Origin: Adineta vaga
Taxonomy: Eukaryota; Animalia; Rotifera
Length of the DNA stretch: 64,000 nt
Reading direction: 5' to 3'
NCBI GenBank assembly: GCA_021613535.1
Contig: CP075495.1
Span: 8,866,001-8,930,000, forward strand
In this document: positions 21,471 through 36,063 of the stretch, one piece after another
Layout of the letters: every line of letters starts with the position of its first letter
Position numbering within the stretch: the stretch's first letter is position 1
The notes under the pieces: model-generated
Told to the model about the DNA's origin: nothing
The model's database searches: none
Seen by the model: the letters and a program-made list of their open reading frames with translations, nothing else
Program-made: the position numbers and the translations under genes

Positions 21471-23256
21471 ATGGCGGCACCGAATACAGAAACTGAAATG
21501 CGTGATGCTAGTAACGATGAGACAATAGATGTCATTTCAGATAGTTCTATTCCTGGTGGTAATCCACAAACAGAATTAAAGGAAGATTCATCCACCGAAG
21601 GTGTGTATATCATTCTAATAATATATTTCAATAACTCTTAGAAGATATTTAGTTTCACCAAATAATTCAATGGGTATGTGGAATTGTCCTATTCTGAATG
21701 CTCAGTAACCTCTGTACATGAATCTTCTGCTTTGTCTTACCACATAGAGTATCCTTTTCTTTTGACAAAATTAATCTTCAAAATTACTGAAATTTTTCTG
21801 AGCGAAGAAATAGAATGTTACATTAGGGGATAAAAATGACTTTTGAACTATAGATTATAAACACTGCATATCATTGTCTATATTGTTGTTTTTTTAGCAA
21901 AGTTTTGGAATATATTTATCTATGATTTGATTTTAGGTTGTACGACATCAAAAGTAGAACATGAGCGCATGGACACCGATGAAAGTAAGAGAATTGTCTT
22001 TTTTCGTTCGTTAAGGATTATTGATTTCATTCATTTCTAAGACATATCTACAGATAATATGAAGCAAACAAAGATAGATGAGCATTTTTCAGTAGAGAAC
22101 AAGGCTGATACTAAACAATCGAAGACCAAGCAATCATCATCAAAAGTAAAAAGCAATAAATATTCCTCTTTGCATCAGCTATTATTTAATATTTTACAGA
22201 ATAAAAAATACAGTGATGGTGACGATAATGAGAATGATCATAAAAATCGAACGTCTAATCGTGTTACACGCTCATCCACTTCTTTATCTCCACTTCGTAT
22301 GAAGTTTGATGATAGTGATGACGAGGATGATCCACGTTATGCTTCATATTCTCAACGAGATATATCTGAATATCGTAATAATTATCCGAACACACGATCA
22401 AATTCGAAAATAACGGACAATTTAAAGTTCTACACCAATAAAATTCCTTCACATCCGGATGGAGATTATATTGATAATATTCATAAAAATTGGTATGGTG
22501 ATTATAGAAAATTAGAATTTCATCATGGTTATATTCAATGGTTATTTCCTTTACAAGAACGAGGACTAAATTGGTCTGCTGAACCATTACAAAAACATGA
22601 AATTGAATCAATTAAACAAGATTCGAAAGCATTAAAACGAATTTTGAAATCTTATAAAATGATGTGAGAAATTTTGATGGACTTAGAGTTTTGGAAATTA
22701 CTGATGACTATTTCTAGGCTCGACTTCTATGGCTTTGAACTAGTTGATGAAAAAACAGGTGAAATACGTCGTTCATCTGATGATTCTTATAGATCATGTT
22801 TTCGTAATCTTAATACGTCTTCCCATAATTATCTTCGAATAACTGTAAGTATGACACTAAAAAGCAATCATATATAATCATTTATGATCTTCGTTTTTTC
22901 TTCTTCCTCTTCTTTAGCGTATATTAAAATGTTTAGGTGAATTCGATTATGAACATTTGAAATTTCCTTTTCTCGAAAGAATTCTATATGAAAGTATTAT
23001 TGAAGATACTTTATCGAATTGTCTTCGATCATGTAAAGATTATTGGATTGAAACTTTACGTAGCCAAGATGAACGACGAGCTATTCGACGATATGCAAGA
23101 GAATTAATTGACTATCGAAATAAACAAATAACCCCACCATCATCACATCATGCTGAACGACCAGAACCACTACCGCCAACAACAACTACAACAACAACAA
23201 GACCTACAAAATCATCTAAATCCAATGATTCGAATGATGATAATATGACAAATTAG
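21471..23256 (+). CDS. Opioid growth factor receptor (OGFr) conserved-domain protein, multi-exon
   Basis: DNLKFYTNKIPSHPDGDYIDNIHKNWYGDYRKLEFHHGYIQWLFPLQERGLN, SYKMM|LDFYG and HNYLRIT|RILKCLGE match the OGFR/OGFRL1 domain. The low-complexity N-terminal exons starting at ATG 21471 are less certain. Confidence 0.88.
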
Positions 23257-23560
23257 AATTTTACTATCTGTGATAGCACATGTGAACTAGTTTCATAAAC
23301 GTCCAAAAAAAAAGTTTTTTTTGTCAATAAAATATAGTATTTAATTAAGAAAACGAATTAGTAAATAATGCAAAAACAAGCAAACAAATGATTTCTTGAA
23401 TACTCTCTAATTATCTACTGAAACACACATTGAATGACAAGATGAAGAGAAAAAAACAAGCAAACAGAATTTTAACAAACTGCAAACAGATCAGCTGATA
23501 TGGATACGAACGGTTGTTTTCTTTATTGAAGAAAAATTAAATAAATGAATAGAATTTCGT

Positions 23561-24831
23561 TCAAAGTTCACGACCAGCTAAATAACGAGTACAAAGTCGG
23601 TTTTTTTTTATTGAAAATGACAAATAAATTTCAACTTACTTTCAACAGAAACAATACATGATTTTTCGACTTTACCCAAAGTATTGCTAGCAACACATGT
23701 ATAAGTACCTTGATCATTATTTTGTAACGATTGAATTTGAAGCCATGATGTCAAAACGTGAGCATTTGGTCCACCACGAACTAATGTTGAAATGCGATCA
23801 TCATCAGCTAGATTAGATAATCTTCTATTAATTATATTCGATTATGATATAGATTTATTTACTTGGATAGACAATTTGTTTGCCATTCTGTGCTGTATAA
23901 ACCCACTCAACTACCGGTAATGGAACACCAGCAGCTTCACATGTAAGGAATACATTACTTCCTGTTTTGTTAGACACACTGACGGGTGGTAATGTTATTT
24001 CGGGCGCTAAAGGAAATAAAATTTGAAAAACAGAATAGAAGAAGAAATGAATTATATCATGATCATGGTTTTACCTGAATCGCATGGTTTACGTTTGAAA
24101 ACTTTAATAATAGGTTTTTGTTCAATTTTAGCAAGTTTACTTGATTCCATTAAATGACAATAATTACGATAAGTCTTACCATCCGAACTTTTTAAAAGAA
24201 CATAGTTAGAAATCTGTTGTAGTTAGTGATGATTTCAACTTACCCACACATTTCTACCTGATCATTACATTCACATCGGGCTTCACGTGGTGCGCCTCGA
24301 GTATCCGTACGAATGCTAGATATTAGAGAAAAAAAACGTTGTACTTAATATTTTCAGGATGCTTGCAAATTTAACGGTAGACTTTTTTCTTTGAGCTCAA
24401 ATTATCGAACTTGTTCATAAGAATGTACTTTTACTATGAATGTGATATGACTTACTTGCATTGAAGATTTTCACCACATGCTTCATATTGCTTGCTCGAT
24501 GGGATATCGGGATGATTGCATAGTTCACTCTACATGTGAAATAATTATCAACCAATGTTCTCTAAATAGATATTCTACAAACTTCGCGTTGAGCACAAAC
24601 TTGACAACAACCACAACGATCGAGTGTTAATCCGGCAAGACATTCTTTATCCGAGGTCTAAAAAACAAACCAAAGATATTTTTTTTATTCTAAAAGAAAA
24701 ATAATAAGTATTCATTCTACCAATGGACATTTGCTTGGATCGCATGGTTCACATGGCTTAGTTTGTTGAGCAAAAACTATTGAGTAGACGATAGCTAAAG
24801 TAAGTAATGTAAAAAGACGTCGAGTAGCCAT
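23561..24831 (-). CDS. Secreted IGFBP-Kazal-Ig protein (IGFBP7/IGFBP-rP1/KAZALD1-like), about 8 small exons; missed by the ORF track
   Basis: Signal peptide MATRRLFTLLTLAIVYSIVFA; IGFBP domain CEPCDPSKCP..CLAGLTLDRCGCCQVCAQ; Kazal CECNDQVEMCG|SDGKTYRNYCHL; Ig domain VFLTCEAAGVPLPVVEW...DQGTYTCVASNTLG; ends TGREL*. Confidence 0.9.
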
Positions 24832-27756
24832 CGTATATTATTGTTGTAAAAAAAAGTGGTAGATATGTTGTTTGTTCTTTCGTCGTTCTTTCTCACTATC
24901 GTTACTTTAGATATTATTTATGTCCGTTTGCGGTTATACAGGCGAACAGCGACGGCGACGACGACGATATATTGACAAGTCCCTTACTAATACAGCGACA
25001 GAGAGCGAGAAAAAAGAAGAGAAGAAAGAGAGTCAGTACATACAACGACGGTACAGTAAGATATACAGAGAAGAAGAAAAAAATACCAAGCGACAGATGG
25101 TTGTATTACCATACATCTTCCAGATCTATTCCATTCTAGCATATCTCTGTTTACTTTACTTATCAATCTGACCAAGAAATCTAACGTCCTTCTCTTCTAC
25201 ATTTTCTTTCCTATAGAAAAATTCTCTAGATATACAATTAATTCTTTTATCTATAGATAGTTGATGGTACTGTCTTATTCTATTGCATAAACTCTATATT
25301 TATATACCATCTCTCTCTCTTTCTTGCTGTTGATATTCTCATATACACATAGATTTGCTTGCTTGCAGATTATATAATCAACATATACATAGGAGAGCAG
25401 ACAGAAAAAGCTTGTACTATACATATAGTTACGAGAAGATGGATAGTAACGACAATCTTGATGTTGTCCTTCAATCATTTATAGAAAACGAAGGTTACTA
25501 TTATTGTTTGACAAGAAATATATTCATAAAAAAATATCAAATGCTACATTTTTATGCTAATCAATGATCTTTCGAAGCACTGAAAATGATTCCTAGGCGT
25601 TAAATTATTTGTATGCACCTCACAAATAAAACCTCAATTGTGTAGACCTTGTTTTCAATAATTGTTTATAACCACACCACCTACTTCTATGTATATTACT
25701 ACTTTATAGTTTTCATATTTATGGGCGTTTTTGAGAACTATATAAATTCAGAAGAACACTGATCAGATAAGATTTATATGGTTTTCTAATCATAAAATTC
25801 TTGTTTTCTATATCAAATATATTCAGAATGAACGTTTAGTTTTTATCAAGTATAAAGTAAGATTGGTAGAACCTATATTGACATTTTAAATTTAATTTTT
25901 CTCTAGAATAGATATTTATATATTTTCTTTTATTTATAAAAATTCATGAAAATCGAATTAAATTACGCATTTGAATATAATGAAAAGTTGCTCTGAGCTA
26001 AAGAACTTATTCAGATATAATTATTTCCAACAGTGAATCGTTTATAAAAATGATAAAATCTATGAAAAAAAAAGAATGAAATCAGTCTTCTGAAATACGC
26101 ACATTGAAATTATATAGTTTCTCTATCAAAATTGAGCTTAAGAGGTATTTTAAGTGTTATCGCATTAAACTTTCACGCTGGAAAATCATTTCATCATGTC
26201 GCTACACTTTATTTTCCTTTGAGGTATAGAATTGTGCATTTTTATCTGAAAAAATTGATTTTCGAAGTTTGACTTTATATTTTATTCAAGAATATCTCAA
26301 AAAGACAACACTTAGGCGAAGCAGATAGCGACCTTCACCAATTTTTAAATTCTCTTGAACTTATTCAGTGATTTTACAAATTGACGAGTGCAACACAAAA
26401 AAGTTTGTGAAAGATAGAGGTAGTGCAAACCACACAGCATCCTTTGAGACACAGTTCCTTTTATCTAGTATAAAATTATTTTTATACATCAATGATATCT
26501 GATGAATCAATTCATTAGTCATGTTTTTTTTATATATAATTATCTTGCGAAAATAAGATGCAACGTTCATCTAAGAGAGATTTCTACGGATGCAAATATG
26601 CTCATACTGATTATCATTAAATAATCTGTTTTTCAGGGCTTAGCTCTCATTTGTTTTATTTAATACTAAGTCATTGTTAATTATGTTTTTTTTCTCTTGT
26701 TTTTGCCTCCTGCAAAAAGACGGATATAAAAGAAAAGTACATTATATTATAGAATTTATTATATTCAACAACCATTATTTTTGTTTGATCGTTTCCTAAC
26801 ACATACCGGTAAGGATTTAATCTTTTTTCTTATACCATAACTGTTCATAATCTTTAGTTTGAGAAAGTTTTGTTCGATTGTCATTTTCATAGATCCTAGT
26901 TAAAATTTGTAAATTTGTCATTCAAGTACATCGAGATGCGAAGTTAATTAAAATGTTGACTTGTCCATTGGGACAAAAACAAGTACGAGAAAACAATTTG
27001 ATGAATATATTTCACAGGTTTCGATTGAAAACCCTAAATAGAGTTTATCTATGTCTACTACAAGGTTACTTCATTCTATTTAATGATAGGAATTGCTTGT
27101 CTATCAATTCATTATAGAGCTTTAACTTTTTTCAATTATAATAATCTAGACAGAGAAAGTAATTTTCATGTTTAAGACAAGTCGCATCGACTTATATATT
27201 TAATAAAAAATTACCTTTGTTAATTGAGATCTAATCCGTTATGTTTAATGATAGTTATTTCGTACAGGTTTTTCTACATTTAACTGATTTGGAGATAACT
27301 CAATTGAGAATTCAGATATAAACATTTTAAGTAGGAGAGAATATACTCTATATGCTTGTTCATTAAAAATTTCATATTGTGAAGAGAAATTCTAGTGGGA
27401 AATCAACAGACACATATGCAATTATAGGAGGAAACAAATCATCTTTCAATTCTTGACAAATATACTAGTGATAAAGGTGAATAGATAGAAACTCTTGCGA
27501 ACAAATAGAATGAGAATAGTTTCCATCATTCTATCACACTACAAAAATTTCATTTTACCGTGTCAAAAATCATTCATTTTTAAACCAATACGATATTTGT
27601 GTATATATACGACTGTGAAGATTAAAAAGAGCAAACATTTTATAAGGTAAGAATATAGATTTATATAATAACGGACAGAGTTTCCTAAGTTTTTTTATTA
27701 TATGCTTTCGGAATGGACGATTCATTACTTTTTCTTTCACTATTTCTTGTATTAAG

Positions 27757-28077
27757 ATGTCAACGTCATATAGCTTTTCATTTGGTCTTCTCATTTCATT
27801 ACTTGTAATTCTCTCAATTTCATCAATCTGTCGTCCTATCAATGCTGTTTCAATTCAAAAACGGAATAATCCATATTATGATAGCAGTGAAGACAACGAT
27901 ATTCGATTGATGATCTATCCGAAATATATCAATGTACCACGTCTTCAACGTTCGCCCAGTTATCCACCTCGTACAATTCGTAATTCCTGGTTTCGTGCAT
28001 CTACTTATCAACATATGAAACCAAATGGCGCCGCCGATGAAAAATCTGCCGGAGATAATCTCTTACGATGGGGTTGA
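27757..28077 (+). CDS. Neuropeptide precursor 1 (single C-terminal RWamide peptide), single exon
   Basis: Hydrophobic signal peptide, KR dibasic site, RxxR sites (RLQR, RTIR) and C-terminus GDNLLRW-G-stop (amide donor Gly). TATATAA at about 27662. Confidence 0.85.
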   Translation: MSTSYSFSFGLLISLLVILSISSICRPINAVSIQKRNNPYYDSSEDNDIRLMIYPKYINVPRLQRSPSYPPRTIRNSWFRASTYQHMKPNGAADEKSAGDNLLRWG

Positions 28078-28341
28078 TTAGGATTAATGTTCCAAAAAAG
28101 ATTCATTTTTTCTTTTGCTTTCTAATAAAAACACAAGTGACATCCAAATTAGGTCTATGTCATCTGAGAAGAAGAAGAAAATTTATTAAAATAATGAATA
28201 AATGTCATCTTAATCAACTCAGAATTATTTCAATATATCTAAACACCTACGCATGAAATAAAGTGTAGCTATATATAGAGGGAAAGTTTGATAAATTTAA
28301 TTCACTATGTATTAGAAATATAAGAAGTGATTGGAATCGAA

Positions 28342-28695
28342 ATGCATATCTTCAGTATATCGATTCTATTCTTTGCAATACTTATGCAATTGAATATCAC
28401 AATCATGTCTTTACCATTAGTGTATCATCGAATGAATAGAACTGGTGAAAATATTGAAGAAAACCTGAATATCAAACGATCCGATGATCATACTGCATGG
28501 ATTTTTAGAAGTAGTTCATCGATATGTGATTATCGTCTTCAATTTCGACCTATACCATTAACAGCAACTCATTGTGGATATGGTTCGTAATGAATAAATT
28601 CAGTCGAAGAGATTTTTAGAATCCTTTTCATTTGTTTAGGACATTACAATAAAGGTGATCATGAAAATCAAGTACATCCTTTTAAATATGGTTAA
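28342..28695 (+). CDS. Neuropeptide precursor 2 (C-terminal FKYamide), 2 exons (28342-28582, 28640-28695)
   Basis: Signal peptide MHIFSISILFFAILMQLNITIMS and a KR site. Removing the 57-nt GT-AG intron 28583-28639 gives ...HCGYGHYNKGDHENQVHPFKY-G-stop. AATAAA at about 28718; TATA-like element at about 28270. Confidence 0.8.
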
Positions 28696-29562
28696 TATTG
28701 TTCTTTTCTCAATGTAAAATAAAACAGAAAGAAATTCATTAAACGATCCAATATAATGTAAAATTAGCTCGAAGGTTGAATAAATTACGTTTTCAACTGT
28801 AAAATGCGTAGTTTAAGTTTAGATTTGAGTAACTACGTTTTTTTATCAGATTATTGAAGCTCATTTTTAATGAGTAAGATAAGAATTAGTTCATCTTTAT
28901 ACTCTTTACAGGTCATTTACTCTATATTTTTCTGCGTAAAAGAGCATGGAATAAATCATGAACGTTCATTACTCTACCGATTTCCTGTTTTATTCGTAAC
29001 AACTAGTTCTATTTATATAAAGACTTGAATATTTATTCATATCTCGATTAATCCAGTGTTTTCAATTTTCATATGGTTCTATTGAAAACCAAAACGAATT
29101 AAAATCTATTAAACATCAACAATTTAAATAAAGAAAAAGAAAGAACTGAAAGCAAACAAACAAACAAACAAATAAAACAGAATGTTTATCTATATGATTA
29201 AATATATCTAAAGGAATCTTTTCATCTCGAGAAACTTTCTTTATATAATGTTCTAGATCATAATACAAAGAAGACGAGTGGAACAAAAAAAAAAAGAAGA
29301 AGAAAAAAAAACATAAATAGCAACTAAATCAAGTGAATAAGGAAAAACAAAGATGAAGAAGAAGACAAGTATACAAGTGATTTGTTGTTGATGTTGTTAT
29401 TGTTTTCTTTTTCGTAAACATATACATACACAAATACATGTATATAAGCACTGACAAACAAAATGTGAATACAACAATGGTTGAAATCAAAGAAATGGAC
29501 AAGAAAAGCAATCATATATGTTCGGTTAGTAGATCAGATCATTTTGAAATGTTCGTTTGTTC

Positions 29563-36063
<6,501 letters not shown>

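What the first reader, a model, noticed from the sequence alone, without database searches (positions are those of the whole stretch)
27757..28695. Tandem pair of unannotated amidated neuropeptide precursors (RWamide and FKYamide), candidate NKY/sNPF/PrRP-type system
Seen: two small same-strand genes about 265 bp apart. Each has a TATA-like element, a signal peptide, a KR site and a terminal Gly directly before the stop. Predicted products are NSWFRASTYQHMKPNGAADEKSAGDNLLRW-amide (after RTIR) and a longer peptide ending NQVHPFKY-amide. Both share a W(x)FR(A/S)S block upstream and a hydrophobic-basic-aromatic-Gly end, suggesting ancient tandem duplication. Known: lophotrochozoan NKY precursors carry one long C-terminal peptide with an N-terminal Trp motif and an RY-amide end, and are linked to the sNPF/PrRP receptor family. 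Inference: these are divergent members of that family or a lineage-specific family.
Basis: partly seen in the sequence, partly recalled or inferred. Interest (0 to 1): 0.8.

Follow-up and report, generated by a model that had tools for sequence, protein, structure and literature searches.

The report
Two rotifer amidated-peptide precursor genes

Summary
The window is Adineta vaga chromosome 2. Gene 1 (27757-28077) and gene 2 (28342-28582 plus 28640-28695) are 264 bp apart on the + strand.

Contigs from three RNA-type studies cover only these two units. They show poly(A) tails, removal of a 57-nt GT..AG intron in gene 2, and the rotifer spliced leader joined at the gene 1 ATG.

Both genes have orthologues in Adineta and Rotaria, and always as the same tandem pair. 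A second copy of the pair, with its CHD neighbour, lies on chromosome 5, so the pair predates the bdelloid genome duplication.

Conservation sits on the predicted mature peptides and their processing signals:
- Gene 1: RxxR, then 29-32 residues, then RW-Gly in 35 of 35 sequences.
- Gene 2: KR/RR, a Cys-x15-Cys loop, then PFKY-Gly.

The best reading is two precursors of long, C-terminally amidated signalling peptides.

The NKY/sNPF link is plausible from architecture and C-terminal motif, but unproven. A profile search of 1.84 billion proteins found only rotifer-type relatives. The claimed shared block and tandem-duplication origin are not supported. "Unannotated" is only partly right: GenBank holds hypothetical-protein models.

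The parts
27602..27669 (+). Two TATA-like elements upstream of gene 1 (TATATATA 27602-27609, TATATAAT 27662-27669). Promoter role unverified.
   Evidence: Sequence. No RNA contig covers this stretch, as expected for an outron removed by trans-splicing, but no transcription start was observed.
27755..27756 (+). Trans-splice acceptor AG of gene 1. The 23-nt rotifer spliced leader is joined directly before the ATG.
   Evidence: The X6 contig carries 20 loose letters that, with the next AG, give the Rotifera spliced-leader consensus (consensus in PMC3795323). All three RNA-type runs begin at 27755/27756.
27757..28077 (+). Gene 1 coding sequence: single exon, 106 aa plus stop.
   Evidence: 100% match to P0001, with orthologues P0002-P0009. 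RNA contigs cover 27755/6 to 28148-28217.
27757..27846 (+). Gene 1 signal-peptide region (approximate, residues 1-30).
   Evidence: A hydrophobic core is conserved in all full-length orthologues. Kyte-Doolittle maximum 3.13. No SignalP was available, so the cleavage point is not determined.
27970..27981 (+). R-x-x-R convertase-type cleavage site (R-T-I-R).
   Evidence: R72 and R75 are invariant in alignment A1. Across 35 sequences, Arg at -4 in 34 and Arg at -1 in 32.
27982..28071 (+). Predicted mature peptide 1: 30 residues, from N-S-W-F-R to L-L-R-W, with the C-terminus amidated.
   Evidence: Most invariant columns of A1 fall in this stretch. Length is 29-32 in all 35 relatives. dN/dS is about 0.12-0.20 here against 0.18-0.53 in the pro-region.
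28072..28074 (+). C-terminal Gly, the amide donor, directly before the stop.
   Evidence: RW-Gly in 35 of 35 sequences. It is followed by the stop (24), R (7), RRR (1) or RQEKH (1). The remaining two are run-on gene models.
28124..28217 (+). Gene 1 3' end: AATAAA at 28124-28129 and 28197-28202; poly(A) addition at 28148 and 28217.
   Evidence: Loose poly(A) ends in X3 contigs at 28148 and 28217; sequence.
28270..28299 (+). Gene 2 promoter: TATATATA at 28270-28277 and transcript 5' end at about 28299.
   Evidence: The X6 cDNA contig begins at 28299, preceded by a cap-switch-type adaptor ending in GGGG. No RNA contig covers 28218-28298, apart from a trace in X6.
28342..28582 (+). Gene 2 coding exon 1 (residues 1-80 and the first base of Gly81), including the signal-type N-terminus.
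   Evidence: Model P0010.
28474..28479 (+). K-R site (residues 45-46), the only dibasic site left in this copy.
   Evidence: KR, KQ or RR at this column in orthologues, so it is semi-conserved. The family's main site, W-x-x-[KR]-R, reads W-I-F-R-S here.
28525..28575 (+). Cys62 to Cys78: predicted 17-residue disulfide ring with the invariant core C-D-Y-R-L-Q-x-R-P.
   Evidence: Invariant columns C62 D63 Y64 R65 L66 Q67 R69 P70 L73 T74 C78. The same core occurs in 71 database relatives.
28583..28639 (+). Gene 2 intron: 57 nt, GT..AG, phase 1.
   Evidence: Skipped in contigs of X3 and X6 and present in the DNA run X12. An intron sits at the same codon in the C5 copy, A. ricciae, A. steineri and R. 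sordida.
28640..28695 (+). Gene 2 coding exon 2: the tail ending P-F-K-Y, Gly98 (28690-28692) and the stop (28693-28695).
   Evidence: P-F-K-Y-G-stop is found in all examined loci, and F-K-Y-G ends all 15 complete database models.
28718..28751 (+). Gene 2 3' end: AATAAA at 28718-28723, poly(A) addition at 28751.
   Evidence: Loose poly(A) end in the X3 contig at 28751.

Best explanation
These are two separate genes. Each encodes a small secreted prepropeptide that is processed into one long, C-terminally amidated signalling peptide, in other words a neuropeptide or peptide-hormone precursor.

Gene 1: signal peptide, variable acidic spacer, cleavage after R-x-x-R, then a 30-residue peptide ending L-L-R-W-NH2. 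The final Gly supplies the amide.

Gene 2: signal peptide, spacer, basic cleavage, then a 41-51-residue peptide with one Cys-x15-Cys disulfide ring and a tail ending P-F-K-Y-NH2. Other bdelloid species cleave at KR/RR directly before N-x-x-L-C. In this copy cleavage is probably at K45-R46 or at the single R56.

Shown here:
- The reading frames, separate polyadenylated transcripts, the splice, and trans-splicing of gene 1.
- Conservation across Adineta and Rotaria and across both genome-duplication copies.
- Purifying selection focused on the mature parts.
- Invariant processing signals.
- Genes with peptidylglycine-monooxygenase-type and convertase-type domains in the genome.

Inferred, not shown: actual cleavage, amidation and disulfide formation, secretion from neurons or endocrine cells, and action on G-protein-coupled receptors.

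Their ends (hydrophobic-hydrophobic-basic-aromatic-amide) and one-long-peptide-at-the-C-terminus layout work like the spiralian NKY peptides and share the pharmacophore of sNPF-type peptides. I put true NKY ancestry at about one in three.
For: Organism and copies: Adineta vaga chromosome 2, with a second pair on chromosome 5.

Transcription:
- Contigs of three RNA-type runs from three studies cover only the two units, while a DNA run covers the whole stretch.
- Poly(A) ends at 28148, 28217 and 28751.
- The intron 28583-28639 is removed.
- Spliced leader at 27755/6 (consensus checked).
- Cap-switch adaptor at 28299.

Conservation:
- Alignment A1 and alignment A2.
- 22 clusters of gene 1 relatives in 1.84 billion representatives.
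- 71 gene 2 relatives.
- Family counts: RW-Gly in 35 of 35; after it only the stop or Arg residues, apart from one model ending RQEKH and two run-on models; gene 2 dibasic site KR 61, RR 7.

Selection: dN/dS is lower in the mature parts than in the pro-regions for both genes.

Synteny:
- Gene 2 follows gene 1 in A. ricciae, A. steineri, R. sordida, the chromosome 5 copy and a metagenome contig.
- The CHD neighbour is also duplicated on chromosome 5.

Processing enzymes: Cu2_monooxygen and P_proprotein domains are present in the genome.

Language-model neighbours of gene 1 are mostly peptide-hormone precursor clusters. This is a weak lead only.
Against: - No mature peptide has been detected and no expression site is known. 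The RNA data are whole-animal contigs whose library type is only guessed, although splicing, poly(A) tails and the spliced leader show they are RNA.
- The signal peptide is judged only from hydrophobicity and conservation.
- Pfam, PDB sequences and the ESM Atlas give no family.
- The A. vaga chromosome 2 copy of gene 2 lacks the family's main dibasic site, so its product is uncertain, and it is the most divergent copy (28-48% identity to its relatives in exon 1).
- Three Rotaria magnacalcarata gene 1 sequences have His in place of the -1 Arg.
Confidence: 0.8

Rival explanations
1. The two genes are the rotifer counterparts of the two spiralian NKY paralogues. Gene 1 would correspond to NKY-2 and gene 2 to NKY-1, kept here as a tandem pair. 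Gene 1 would have changed Tyr-amide to Trp-amide, and gene 2 would have gained a disulfide ring and Lys in place of Arg. This refines the best explanation rather than excluding it.
For: - Same precursor layout: one 30-43-residue peptide at the extreme C-terminus after a basic site, ending hydrophobic-R-aromatic-Gly with or without basic residues (NKY sequences in the supplement of PMC8557429).
- The Phoronopsis harmeri NKY starts N-S-F-W and ends I-R-W-G-R-R, so a Trp-amide NKY exists.
- Nemertean NKY-2 ends G-K-L-M-R-Y-G, against G-D-N-L-M-R-W-G in gene 1.
- The oyster NKY ends N-L-L-R-Y-NH2 (10.1101/712687), against N-L-L-R-W in gene 1.
- Nemertean NKY-1 has P-L-P-V-E-T-R-L-S-S-F-G and ends K-P-F-R-Y-G. 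Gene 2 relatives have P-L-P-L-T-S-x-L-C-G-[FY]-G and end N-P-F-K-Y-G, at nearly the same spacing (27 against 25 residues), by eye.
Against: - The profile search found no NKY sequence at E up to 0.001.
- The published NKY core motifs, FW[RQ]P[LM]G[YG] and G[YF]WIWMPAQG, and the diagnostic N-terminal Lys (PMC6425005) are absent.
- No NKY has cysteines.
- The resemblance rests on short motifs compared by eye, and no statistical test was run.
- Ends of the type hydrophobic-basic-aromatic-amide recur in several unrelated families.
Confidence: 0.33
2. They are lineage-specific peptide families of bdelloid rotifers (or of Gnathifera). They are unrelated by descent to NKY, and their RW-amide and KY-amide ends arose independently.
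For: - All named relatives are Adineta or Rotaria; the rest are unnamed metagenome contigs with the same pair.
- No hit in Pfam, PDB sequences or the Atlas.
- The signature strings are absent from the held supplements of two surveys that covered rotifers and from the main text of the paper library.
Against: - Short peptides routinely escape profile searches across phyla, so absence of hits is weak evidence.
- The layout and the several motif matches to NKY-1 and NKY-2 would then all be coincidence.
Confidence: 0.45
3. Gene 1 and gene 2 are ancient tandem duplicates of each other.
For: - Adjacent, same strand and same general layout, both ending aromatic-Gly.
- In this one copy, N-S-W-F-R-A-S resembles A-W-I-F-R-S-S.
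- A Trp lies near the N-terminal cleavage site in both families.
Against: - hhalign gives 4% probability over 4 aligned columns.
- The shared block is specific to the A. vaga chromosome 2 copy. In 68 relatives the position reads W-x-x-[KR]-R.
- Gene 2 has an intron and two cysteines; gene 1 has neither.
- Any duplication would predate the bdelloid genome duplication, so little signal would remain.
Confidence: 0.15
4. They are secreted amidated peptides with a non-neural role, for example antimicrobial, defensive or gland products.
For: The tissue of expression is unknown. Amidation and disulfide rings also occur in antimicrobial peptides and toxins.
Against: - The mature parts are under strong purifying selection and are nearly invariant between genera, while the rest of each precursor drifts. 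This is the pattern of receptor ligands, not of fast-evolving defence peptides.
- There is one copy per subgenome and no expansion.
- The peptides are not notably cationic or amphipathic.
Confidence: 0.08

Closest known systems
Spiralian neuropeptide KY (NKY-1 and NKY-2) precursors of annelids, molluscs, nemerteans, brachiopods and phoronids
   Same: - Signal peptide, long spacer, basic site, then a single long peptide at the very C-terminus.
- A Trp near the peptide's N-terminus (gene 1).
- The end is hydrophobic-Arg-aromatic-Gly with or without basic residues.
- A known NKY ends in RW-Gly (Phoronopsis).
- Two paralogous genes exist per species.
- Several short motif matches: N-L-L-R, L-M-R, P-L-P...F-G, P-F-[RK]-Y-G.
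   Different: - No N-terminal Lys.
- The core motifs FW[RQ]P[LM]G and WIWMPAQG are absent.
- Gene 1 is shorter (29-32 residues) and always Trp-amide.
- Gene 2 has a Cys-x15-Cys ring and Lys-Tyr instead of Arg-Tyr.
- No profile-level homology was detected.
sNPF-type peptides (spiralian LFRFamide/RYamide group) and their PrRP/sNPF-type receptors
   Same: The C-terminal pharmacophore is hydrophobic-hydrophobic-basic-aromatic-amide. Brachiopod precursors filed as sNPF or RFamide type contain copies ending L-F-K-Y-G and M-L-R-W-G. The Platynereis receptor activated by NKY groups with the sNPF receptors.
   Different: sNPF precursors carry several short (5-8 residue) copies. Here there is one long peptide per gene. 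No receptor data exist for rotifers.
Luqin/RYamide precursors
   Same: RW-amide ends occur in ambulacrarian luqins (my own knowledge; the term MRWamide occurs in a crinoid neuropeptide paper, which was not read). Luqin precursors also carry a two-cysteine motif (my own knowledge).
   Different: Luqin is a short peptide placed directly after the signal peptide, with the cysteine motif in the same precursor. Here the peptides are long and C-terminal, gene 1 has no such cysteine motif, and the cysteines of gene 2 lie inside the amidated peptide.
NPY/NPF and PrRP precursors
   Same: Long (about 30-40 residue) peptides with an amidated aromatic end preceded by a basic residue.
   Different: In those families the peptide follows the signal peptide directly and is followed by G-K/R-R and a C-terminal extension. 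The R-x-R-F/Y motif and the proline-rich N-terminus are absent here. Rotifer NPF has been reported separately (10.1101/2024.07.20.604414).

Membership tests
Amidated neuropeptide / peptide-hormone precursor (generic kind) | N-terminal signal peptide | tested here: inconclusive
   A hydrophobic core is conserved in all full-length relatives. Kyte-Doolittle 10-residue maxima are 2.6-3.3. No dedicated predictor was available.
Amidated neuropeptide / peptide-hormone precursor (generic kind) | Conserved basic cleavage site flanking the conserved peptide | tested here: met
   Gene 1 across 35 sequences: Arg at -4 in 34, Arg at -1 in 32. Gene 2: KR 61, RR 7; this copy alone reads RS but keeps an upstream KR.
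Amidated neuropeptide / peptide-hormone precursor (generic kind) | C-terminal Gly (amide donor) followed by a stop or basic residues | tested here: met
   RW-Gly in 35 of 35 gene 1 relatives, followed by the stop, R or RRR in 32. FKY-Gly-stop in all 15 complete gene 2 models and in every locus read.
Amidated neuropeptide / peptide-hormone precursor (generic kind) | Mature peptide more conserved than the rest of the precursor | tested here: met
   Most invariant columns lie in the predicted peptides. dN/dS is lower there.
Amidated neuropeptide / peptide-hormone precursor (generic kind) | Gene is expressed as mRNA | tested here: met
   Spliced, polyadenylated contigs in runs of three studies; gene 1 is also trans-spliced.
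Amidated neuropeptide / peptide-hormone precursor (generic kind) | Processing enzymes encoded in the genome | tested here: met
   Cu2_monooxygen domain, best 143 bits, and several convertase P-domains. Orthology to PHM or PC2 was not resolved.
Amidated neuropeptide / peptide-hormone precursor (generic kind) | Mature amidated peptide present in neurons or endocrine cells and acting on a receptor | not testable with these tools
   Needs mass spectrometry, in situ hybridisation and receptor assays.
NKY | Single long peptide at the C-terminal end of the precursor | tested here: met
   Both genes, compared with the NKY precursors.
NKY | C-terminal hydrophobic-Arg-Tyr-Gly end | tested here: inconclusive
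   Gene 1 has [LM]-R-W-Gly; RW-Gly occurs in one published NKY (Phoronopsis). Gene 2 has F-K-Y-Gly, with Lys in place of Arg.
NKY | Core motif FW[RQ]P[LM]G[YG] (NKY-1) or G[YF]WIWMPAQG (NKY-2), and Lys at the peptide's N-terminus (PMC6425005) | tested here: not met
   Gene 1 starts N-S-W-F-R-A-S; only the Trp matches. The gene 2 peptide has no such motif. Position 1 is Asn in 32 of 35 gene 1 relatives and Lys in one.
NKY | Sequence homology detectable by profile search | tested here: not met
   hmmsearch of the A1 profile against 1.84 billion representatives found 22 clusters, all of the rotifer type.
NKY | Activates the NKY/sNPF-type receptor | not testable with these tools
Luqin/RYamide | Short peptide directly after the signal peptide plus a C-terminal two-Cys motif in the same precursor | tested here: not met
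   The peptides are C-terminal and long. The pro-region of gene 1 has only one, non-conserved Cys.
sNPF | Several short copies ending hydrophobic-R-[FY]-amide | tested here: not met
   There is one long peptide per gene. Only the last four residues resemble sNPF-type copies.
NPY/NPF and PrRP | Peptide directly after the signal peptide, R-x-R-[FY]-Gly-basic, then a C-terminal extension | tested here: not met
   A 45-50-residue spacer precedes the peptides, there is no extension after Gly, and no R-x-R motif is present.

The most novel reading that the evidence does not exclude
The pair is the gnathiferan form of NKY-1 and NKY-2, still sitting side by side. That would show three things:
- The two NKY paralogues arose by tandem duplication before rotifers split from other spiralians.
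- Trp-amide and Lys-Tyr-amide are tolerated variants.
- One paralogue acquired a disulfide ring.

It would also supply candidate ligands for the rotifer sNPF/PrRP-type receptor and help settle the open question of what the true NKY receptor is.
Probability: 0.3. Interest if true: 0.6.

Novelty: new member of a known kind. Interest (0 to 1): 0.45.

Why it matters
Rotifers and other gnathiferans are the least sampled spiralians for peptide signalling. Thiel et al. 2021 call them the next frontier. The only broad rotifer survey in the library used arthropod-derived models and does not list these peptides.

This work defines two well-conserved, expressed, long amidated peptides with exact processing sites. 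That gives ready targets for mass spectrometry, in situ mapping of the small bdelloid nervous system, and receptor deorphanisation.

If the NKY link holds, the tandem arrangement would inform the origin of the NKY paralogues and the unresolved pairing of NKY and sNPF peptides with their receptors. If it does not hold, these are two new rotifer-specific peptide families. Either way the kind of system is well known.

Tried and rejected
Searches that gave nothing useful:
- Pfam scan of both proteins: no family.
- Rfam on the whole window: nothing.
- PDB sequence search with both profiles: only chance-level hits.
- ESM Atlas. Gene 2 neighbours were uninformative (trypsin-like and unnamed clusters, low shared features). 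Gene 1 neighbours were a mix of peptide-hormone precursor clusters with no agreed family, taken as a weak lead only.
- The bacterial-type promoter and terminator scan is irrelevant for this eukaryote and was at shuffle level.
- Earlier findings of the scan: none near this place.
- Text search for the signature strings in the paper library and in the held supplements of two rotifer-covering surveys: none found. Some supplement files were cut when stored, so this is not proof of novelty.

Families rejected on precursor layout: luqin, sNPF, PrRP, NPY/NPF, and myoinhibitory peptide (several short W-x6-W-amide copies; my own knowledge).

Readings rejected:
- One dicistronic unit. There are separate poly(A) sites and a separate, adaptor-tagged 5' end for gene 2, and no RNA coverage between them.
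- The alternative gene 2 donor (GTAATG at 28587). It would give a short non-amidated end, and no RNA contig uses it.
Full report
**Where we are.** The window has about 30% G+C. Gene 1 matches itself on contig C2 of a 100.8-Mb, six-contig genome. Its closest named relatives are from Adineta ricciae, A. steineri and Rotaria. The spliced gene 2 model is GenBank 'hypothetical protein I4U23_008543 [Adineta vaga]'. The organism is therefore the bdelloid rotifer Adineta vaga, chromosome 2.

**The observation.**
- Gene 1 runs from 27757 to 28077 as one exon of 106 codons.
- Gene 2 starts at 28342, which is 264 nt after the gene 1 stop, and ends at 28695.
- Both start with a hydrophobic stretch and end in Gly directly before the stop.

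**Transcripts.** I laid contigs of four public runs on 27300-29300.
- A DNA-type run covers the whole stretch.
- Three small assemblies from three different studies cover only two blocks: 27755/6 to 28148-28217, and 28299/28346 to 28751.
- Loose poly(A) ends sit at 28148, 28217 and 28751, each downstream of an AATAAA.
- Two of the three runs skip 28583-28639 (57 nt, GT..AG).
- One gene 1 contig begins with 20 letters that, with the next AG, spell the Rotifera spliced-leader consensus (PMC3795323). They are joined directly in front of the ATG.
- One gene 2 contig begins at 28299 behind a cap-switch cDNA adaptor, 29 nt after TATATATA (28270-28277).

So the runs are RNA. The two genes give separate, mature mRNAs. 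Gene 1 is trans-spliced and gene 2 has its own TATA promoter. The refutation test 'no transcripts' fails.

**Conservation of gene 1.**
- The word-index search found eight relatives.
- The exhaustive profile search of 1.84 billion representatives found 22 clusters. All are of the same type, and the named ones are only Adineta or Rotaria.
- In 35 sequences the peptide is 29-32 residues long.
- It is preceded by Arg at -4 (34 of 35) and Arg at -1 (32 of 35).
- It ends in R-W-Gly in all 35.
- After the Gly comes the stop (24), R (7), RRR (1) or RQEKH (1). Two more are run-on gene models.
- That is the expected signature of a convertase site and an amidation signal.
- Most invariant columns lie in the peptide and its cleavage site.
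- dN/dS against A. ricciae, A. steineri and R. sordida is 0.12-0.20 in the peptide and 0.18-0.53 in the pro-region.
- The Q-K-R site near the signal peptide is not conserved.

**Conservation of gene 2.**
- The single-sequence search found only the A. vaga model.
- A profile of exon 1 from five loci (A2) found 71 proteins.
- All carry the core C-D-Y-R-L-Q-[FL]-R-P-L-P-L-T-x-x-L-C-x-[YF]-G.
- The 15 models that include exon 2 end in F-K-Y-G.
- The intron sits at the same codon in the chromosome 5 copy, A. ricciae, A. steineri and R. sordida.
- Directly before N-x-x-L-C, 61 relatives have KR and 7 have RR. The copy in this window alone has R-S (W-I-F-R-S-S-S-S-I-C).
- In this copy cleavage must therefore use the upstream K45-R46, giving 51 residues, or the single R56, giving 41 residues. 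This copy is also the most divergent.

**The pair.**
- In every locus fetched, gene 2 lies a few hundred bases downstream of gene 1 on the same strand. This holds for A. ricciae, three A. steineri contigs, three R. sordida contigs, the A. vaga chromosome 5 copy and an unnamed metagenome contig.
- In Adineta the flanks are also kept. Upstream lie an OGFr-like gene (seen in A. vaga and A. steineri) and an IGFBP/Kazal/Ig gene. Downstream lies a CHD3/4-type helicase on the other strand.
- The CHD gene has an 82-88% identical copy next to the chromosome 5 pair, in the same relative orientation.
- The metagenome contig shares the kinase neighbour of the chromosome 5 pair.
- The pair therefore existed before the bdelloid genome duplication, and both copies have been kept.

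Elsewhere the position is the cleavage site W-x-x-[KR]-R. Profile-profile comparison gives 4% probability over four columns. I do not consider the duplication shown.

**What it most likely is.** It is two precursors of long, C-terminally amidated secreted peptides. One is linear and ends in L-[LM]-R-W-amide. The other has a 17-residue disulfide ring and ends in P-F-K-Y-amide. The genome encodes copper-monooxygenase-type and convertase-type domains, so the processing route is available. Cleavage, amidation, disulfide formation, cell type and receptor are all inferred, not shown.

**Comparison with known families.**
- Pfam, PDB sequences and the ESM Atlas give no family.
- Luqin, sNPF, PrRP and NPY/NPF fail on precursor layout.
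- The closest known system is spiralian NKY. Its precursors (supplement of PMC8557429) also carry one long peptide at the very C-terminus.
- The Phoronopsis NKY starts N-S-F-W and ends I-R-W-G-R-R.
- Nemertean NKY-2 ends G-K-L-M-R-Y-G, and the oyster NKY ends N-L-L-R-Y-amide. Gene 1 ends G-D-N-L-[LM]-R-W-G.
- Nemertean NKY-1 contains P-L-P-V-E-T-R-L-S-S-F-G and ends K-P-F-R-Y-G. Gene 2 relatives contain P-L-P-L-T-S-x-L-C-G-[FY]-G and end N-P-F-K-Y-G, at almost the same distance.
- Brachiopod precursors filed as sNPF or RFamide type hold copies ending L-F-K-Y-G and M-L-R-W-G. Both ends therefore fall within the known range of this pharmacophore.
- Against membership, the published NKY core motifs and the N-terminal Lys are missing. 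No NKY has cysteines. The profile search did not reach NKY.
- These motif matches were made by eye.
- I therefore say the genes work like NKY-type precursors and put true NKY descent at about one in three.

**Novelty.** The gene models exist in GenBank as hypothetical or unnamed proteins, so 'unannotated' holds only for function. The two surveys that covered rotifers do not contain the signature strings in their held supplements. These are De Oliveira et al. 2019 and the NP-HMMer preprint, which lists 20 families. The main text of the paper library has no hit either. This is a new member, or pair of members, of a well-known kind of system in an under-sampled phylum.

**Method note.** I never joined the gene 2 exons myself. 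Searches used exon 1 by reference, separate exon alignments, or the database model P0010.

Noticed in passing
window 27755-27757: The gene 1 mRNA carries the 23-nt rotifer spliced leader joined directly to the ATG, so its whole 5' UTR is the leader. Gene 2, 264 nt downstream of the gene 1 stop, is not trans-spliced in the one tagged cDNA contig and has its own TATA box and start.
   Followed up: partly
window 28501-28524 (W53 to I61 of gene 2): This A. vaga chromosome 2 copy is the only one of 69 scored relatives that has lost the KR/RR site before the Cys ring (R-S-S-S-S instead of [KR]-R-N-[SP]-x). It also has T-H-C where most others have A-L-C. It may make a longer peptide or be drifting, although it is transcribed and spliced.
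   Followed up: partly
G000:C5:9714203-9719529 (L002, L005): A second pair lies on chromosome 5, with a gene 1 type ending V-M-R-W-G-R and a gene 2 type with L-Q-L-R-P. It has a duplicated CHD neighbour and a protein-kinase gene upstream. The metagenome contig L013 has the same kinase, gene 1, gene 2 order, so both duplication copies are conserved between species.
   Followed up: partly
window 27948, 27954, 28476, 28519, 28539, 28552: The runs differ from the assembly at single letters.
- Four differences are synonymous (Q64 and S66 of gene 1; K45 and L66 of gene 2).
- Two change gene 2 residues: S60A in the variable spacer, and I71L, which moves towards the family consensus P-L-P.
These are probably alleles or strains.
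   Followed up: no
window 22059-23754 and 29670-35780: Neighbours are an OGFr-like gene (+), an Ig-domain exon of an IGFBP/Kazal/Ig-type gene (-), and a CHD3/4 (Mi-2)-type helicase with PHD, SNF2, Helicase_C and CHDII_SANT-like domains (-). In A. steineri the OGFr, IGFBP/Kazal/Ig, peptide-pair and CHD order is the same. A. ricciae shows it from the IGFBP/Kazal/Ig gene onward.
   Followed up: partly
P0099 and P0088 (Logan assemblies): Two database proteins are run-on gene models that read past the RW-Gly end. P0099 continues into a divergent gene 2-like core (C-D-Y-R-L-L-F-R-P-W-P), which shows the tandem order in a more distant, unnamed organism.
   Followed up: no
P0081, P0102, P0103 (Rotaria magnacalcarata): These gene 1 orthologues have His instead of Arg at the -1 position of the R-x-x-R site (P-R-N-I-H before N-S-W). 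That raises the question of how, or whether, the peptide's N-terminus is released in that species.
   Followed up: no
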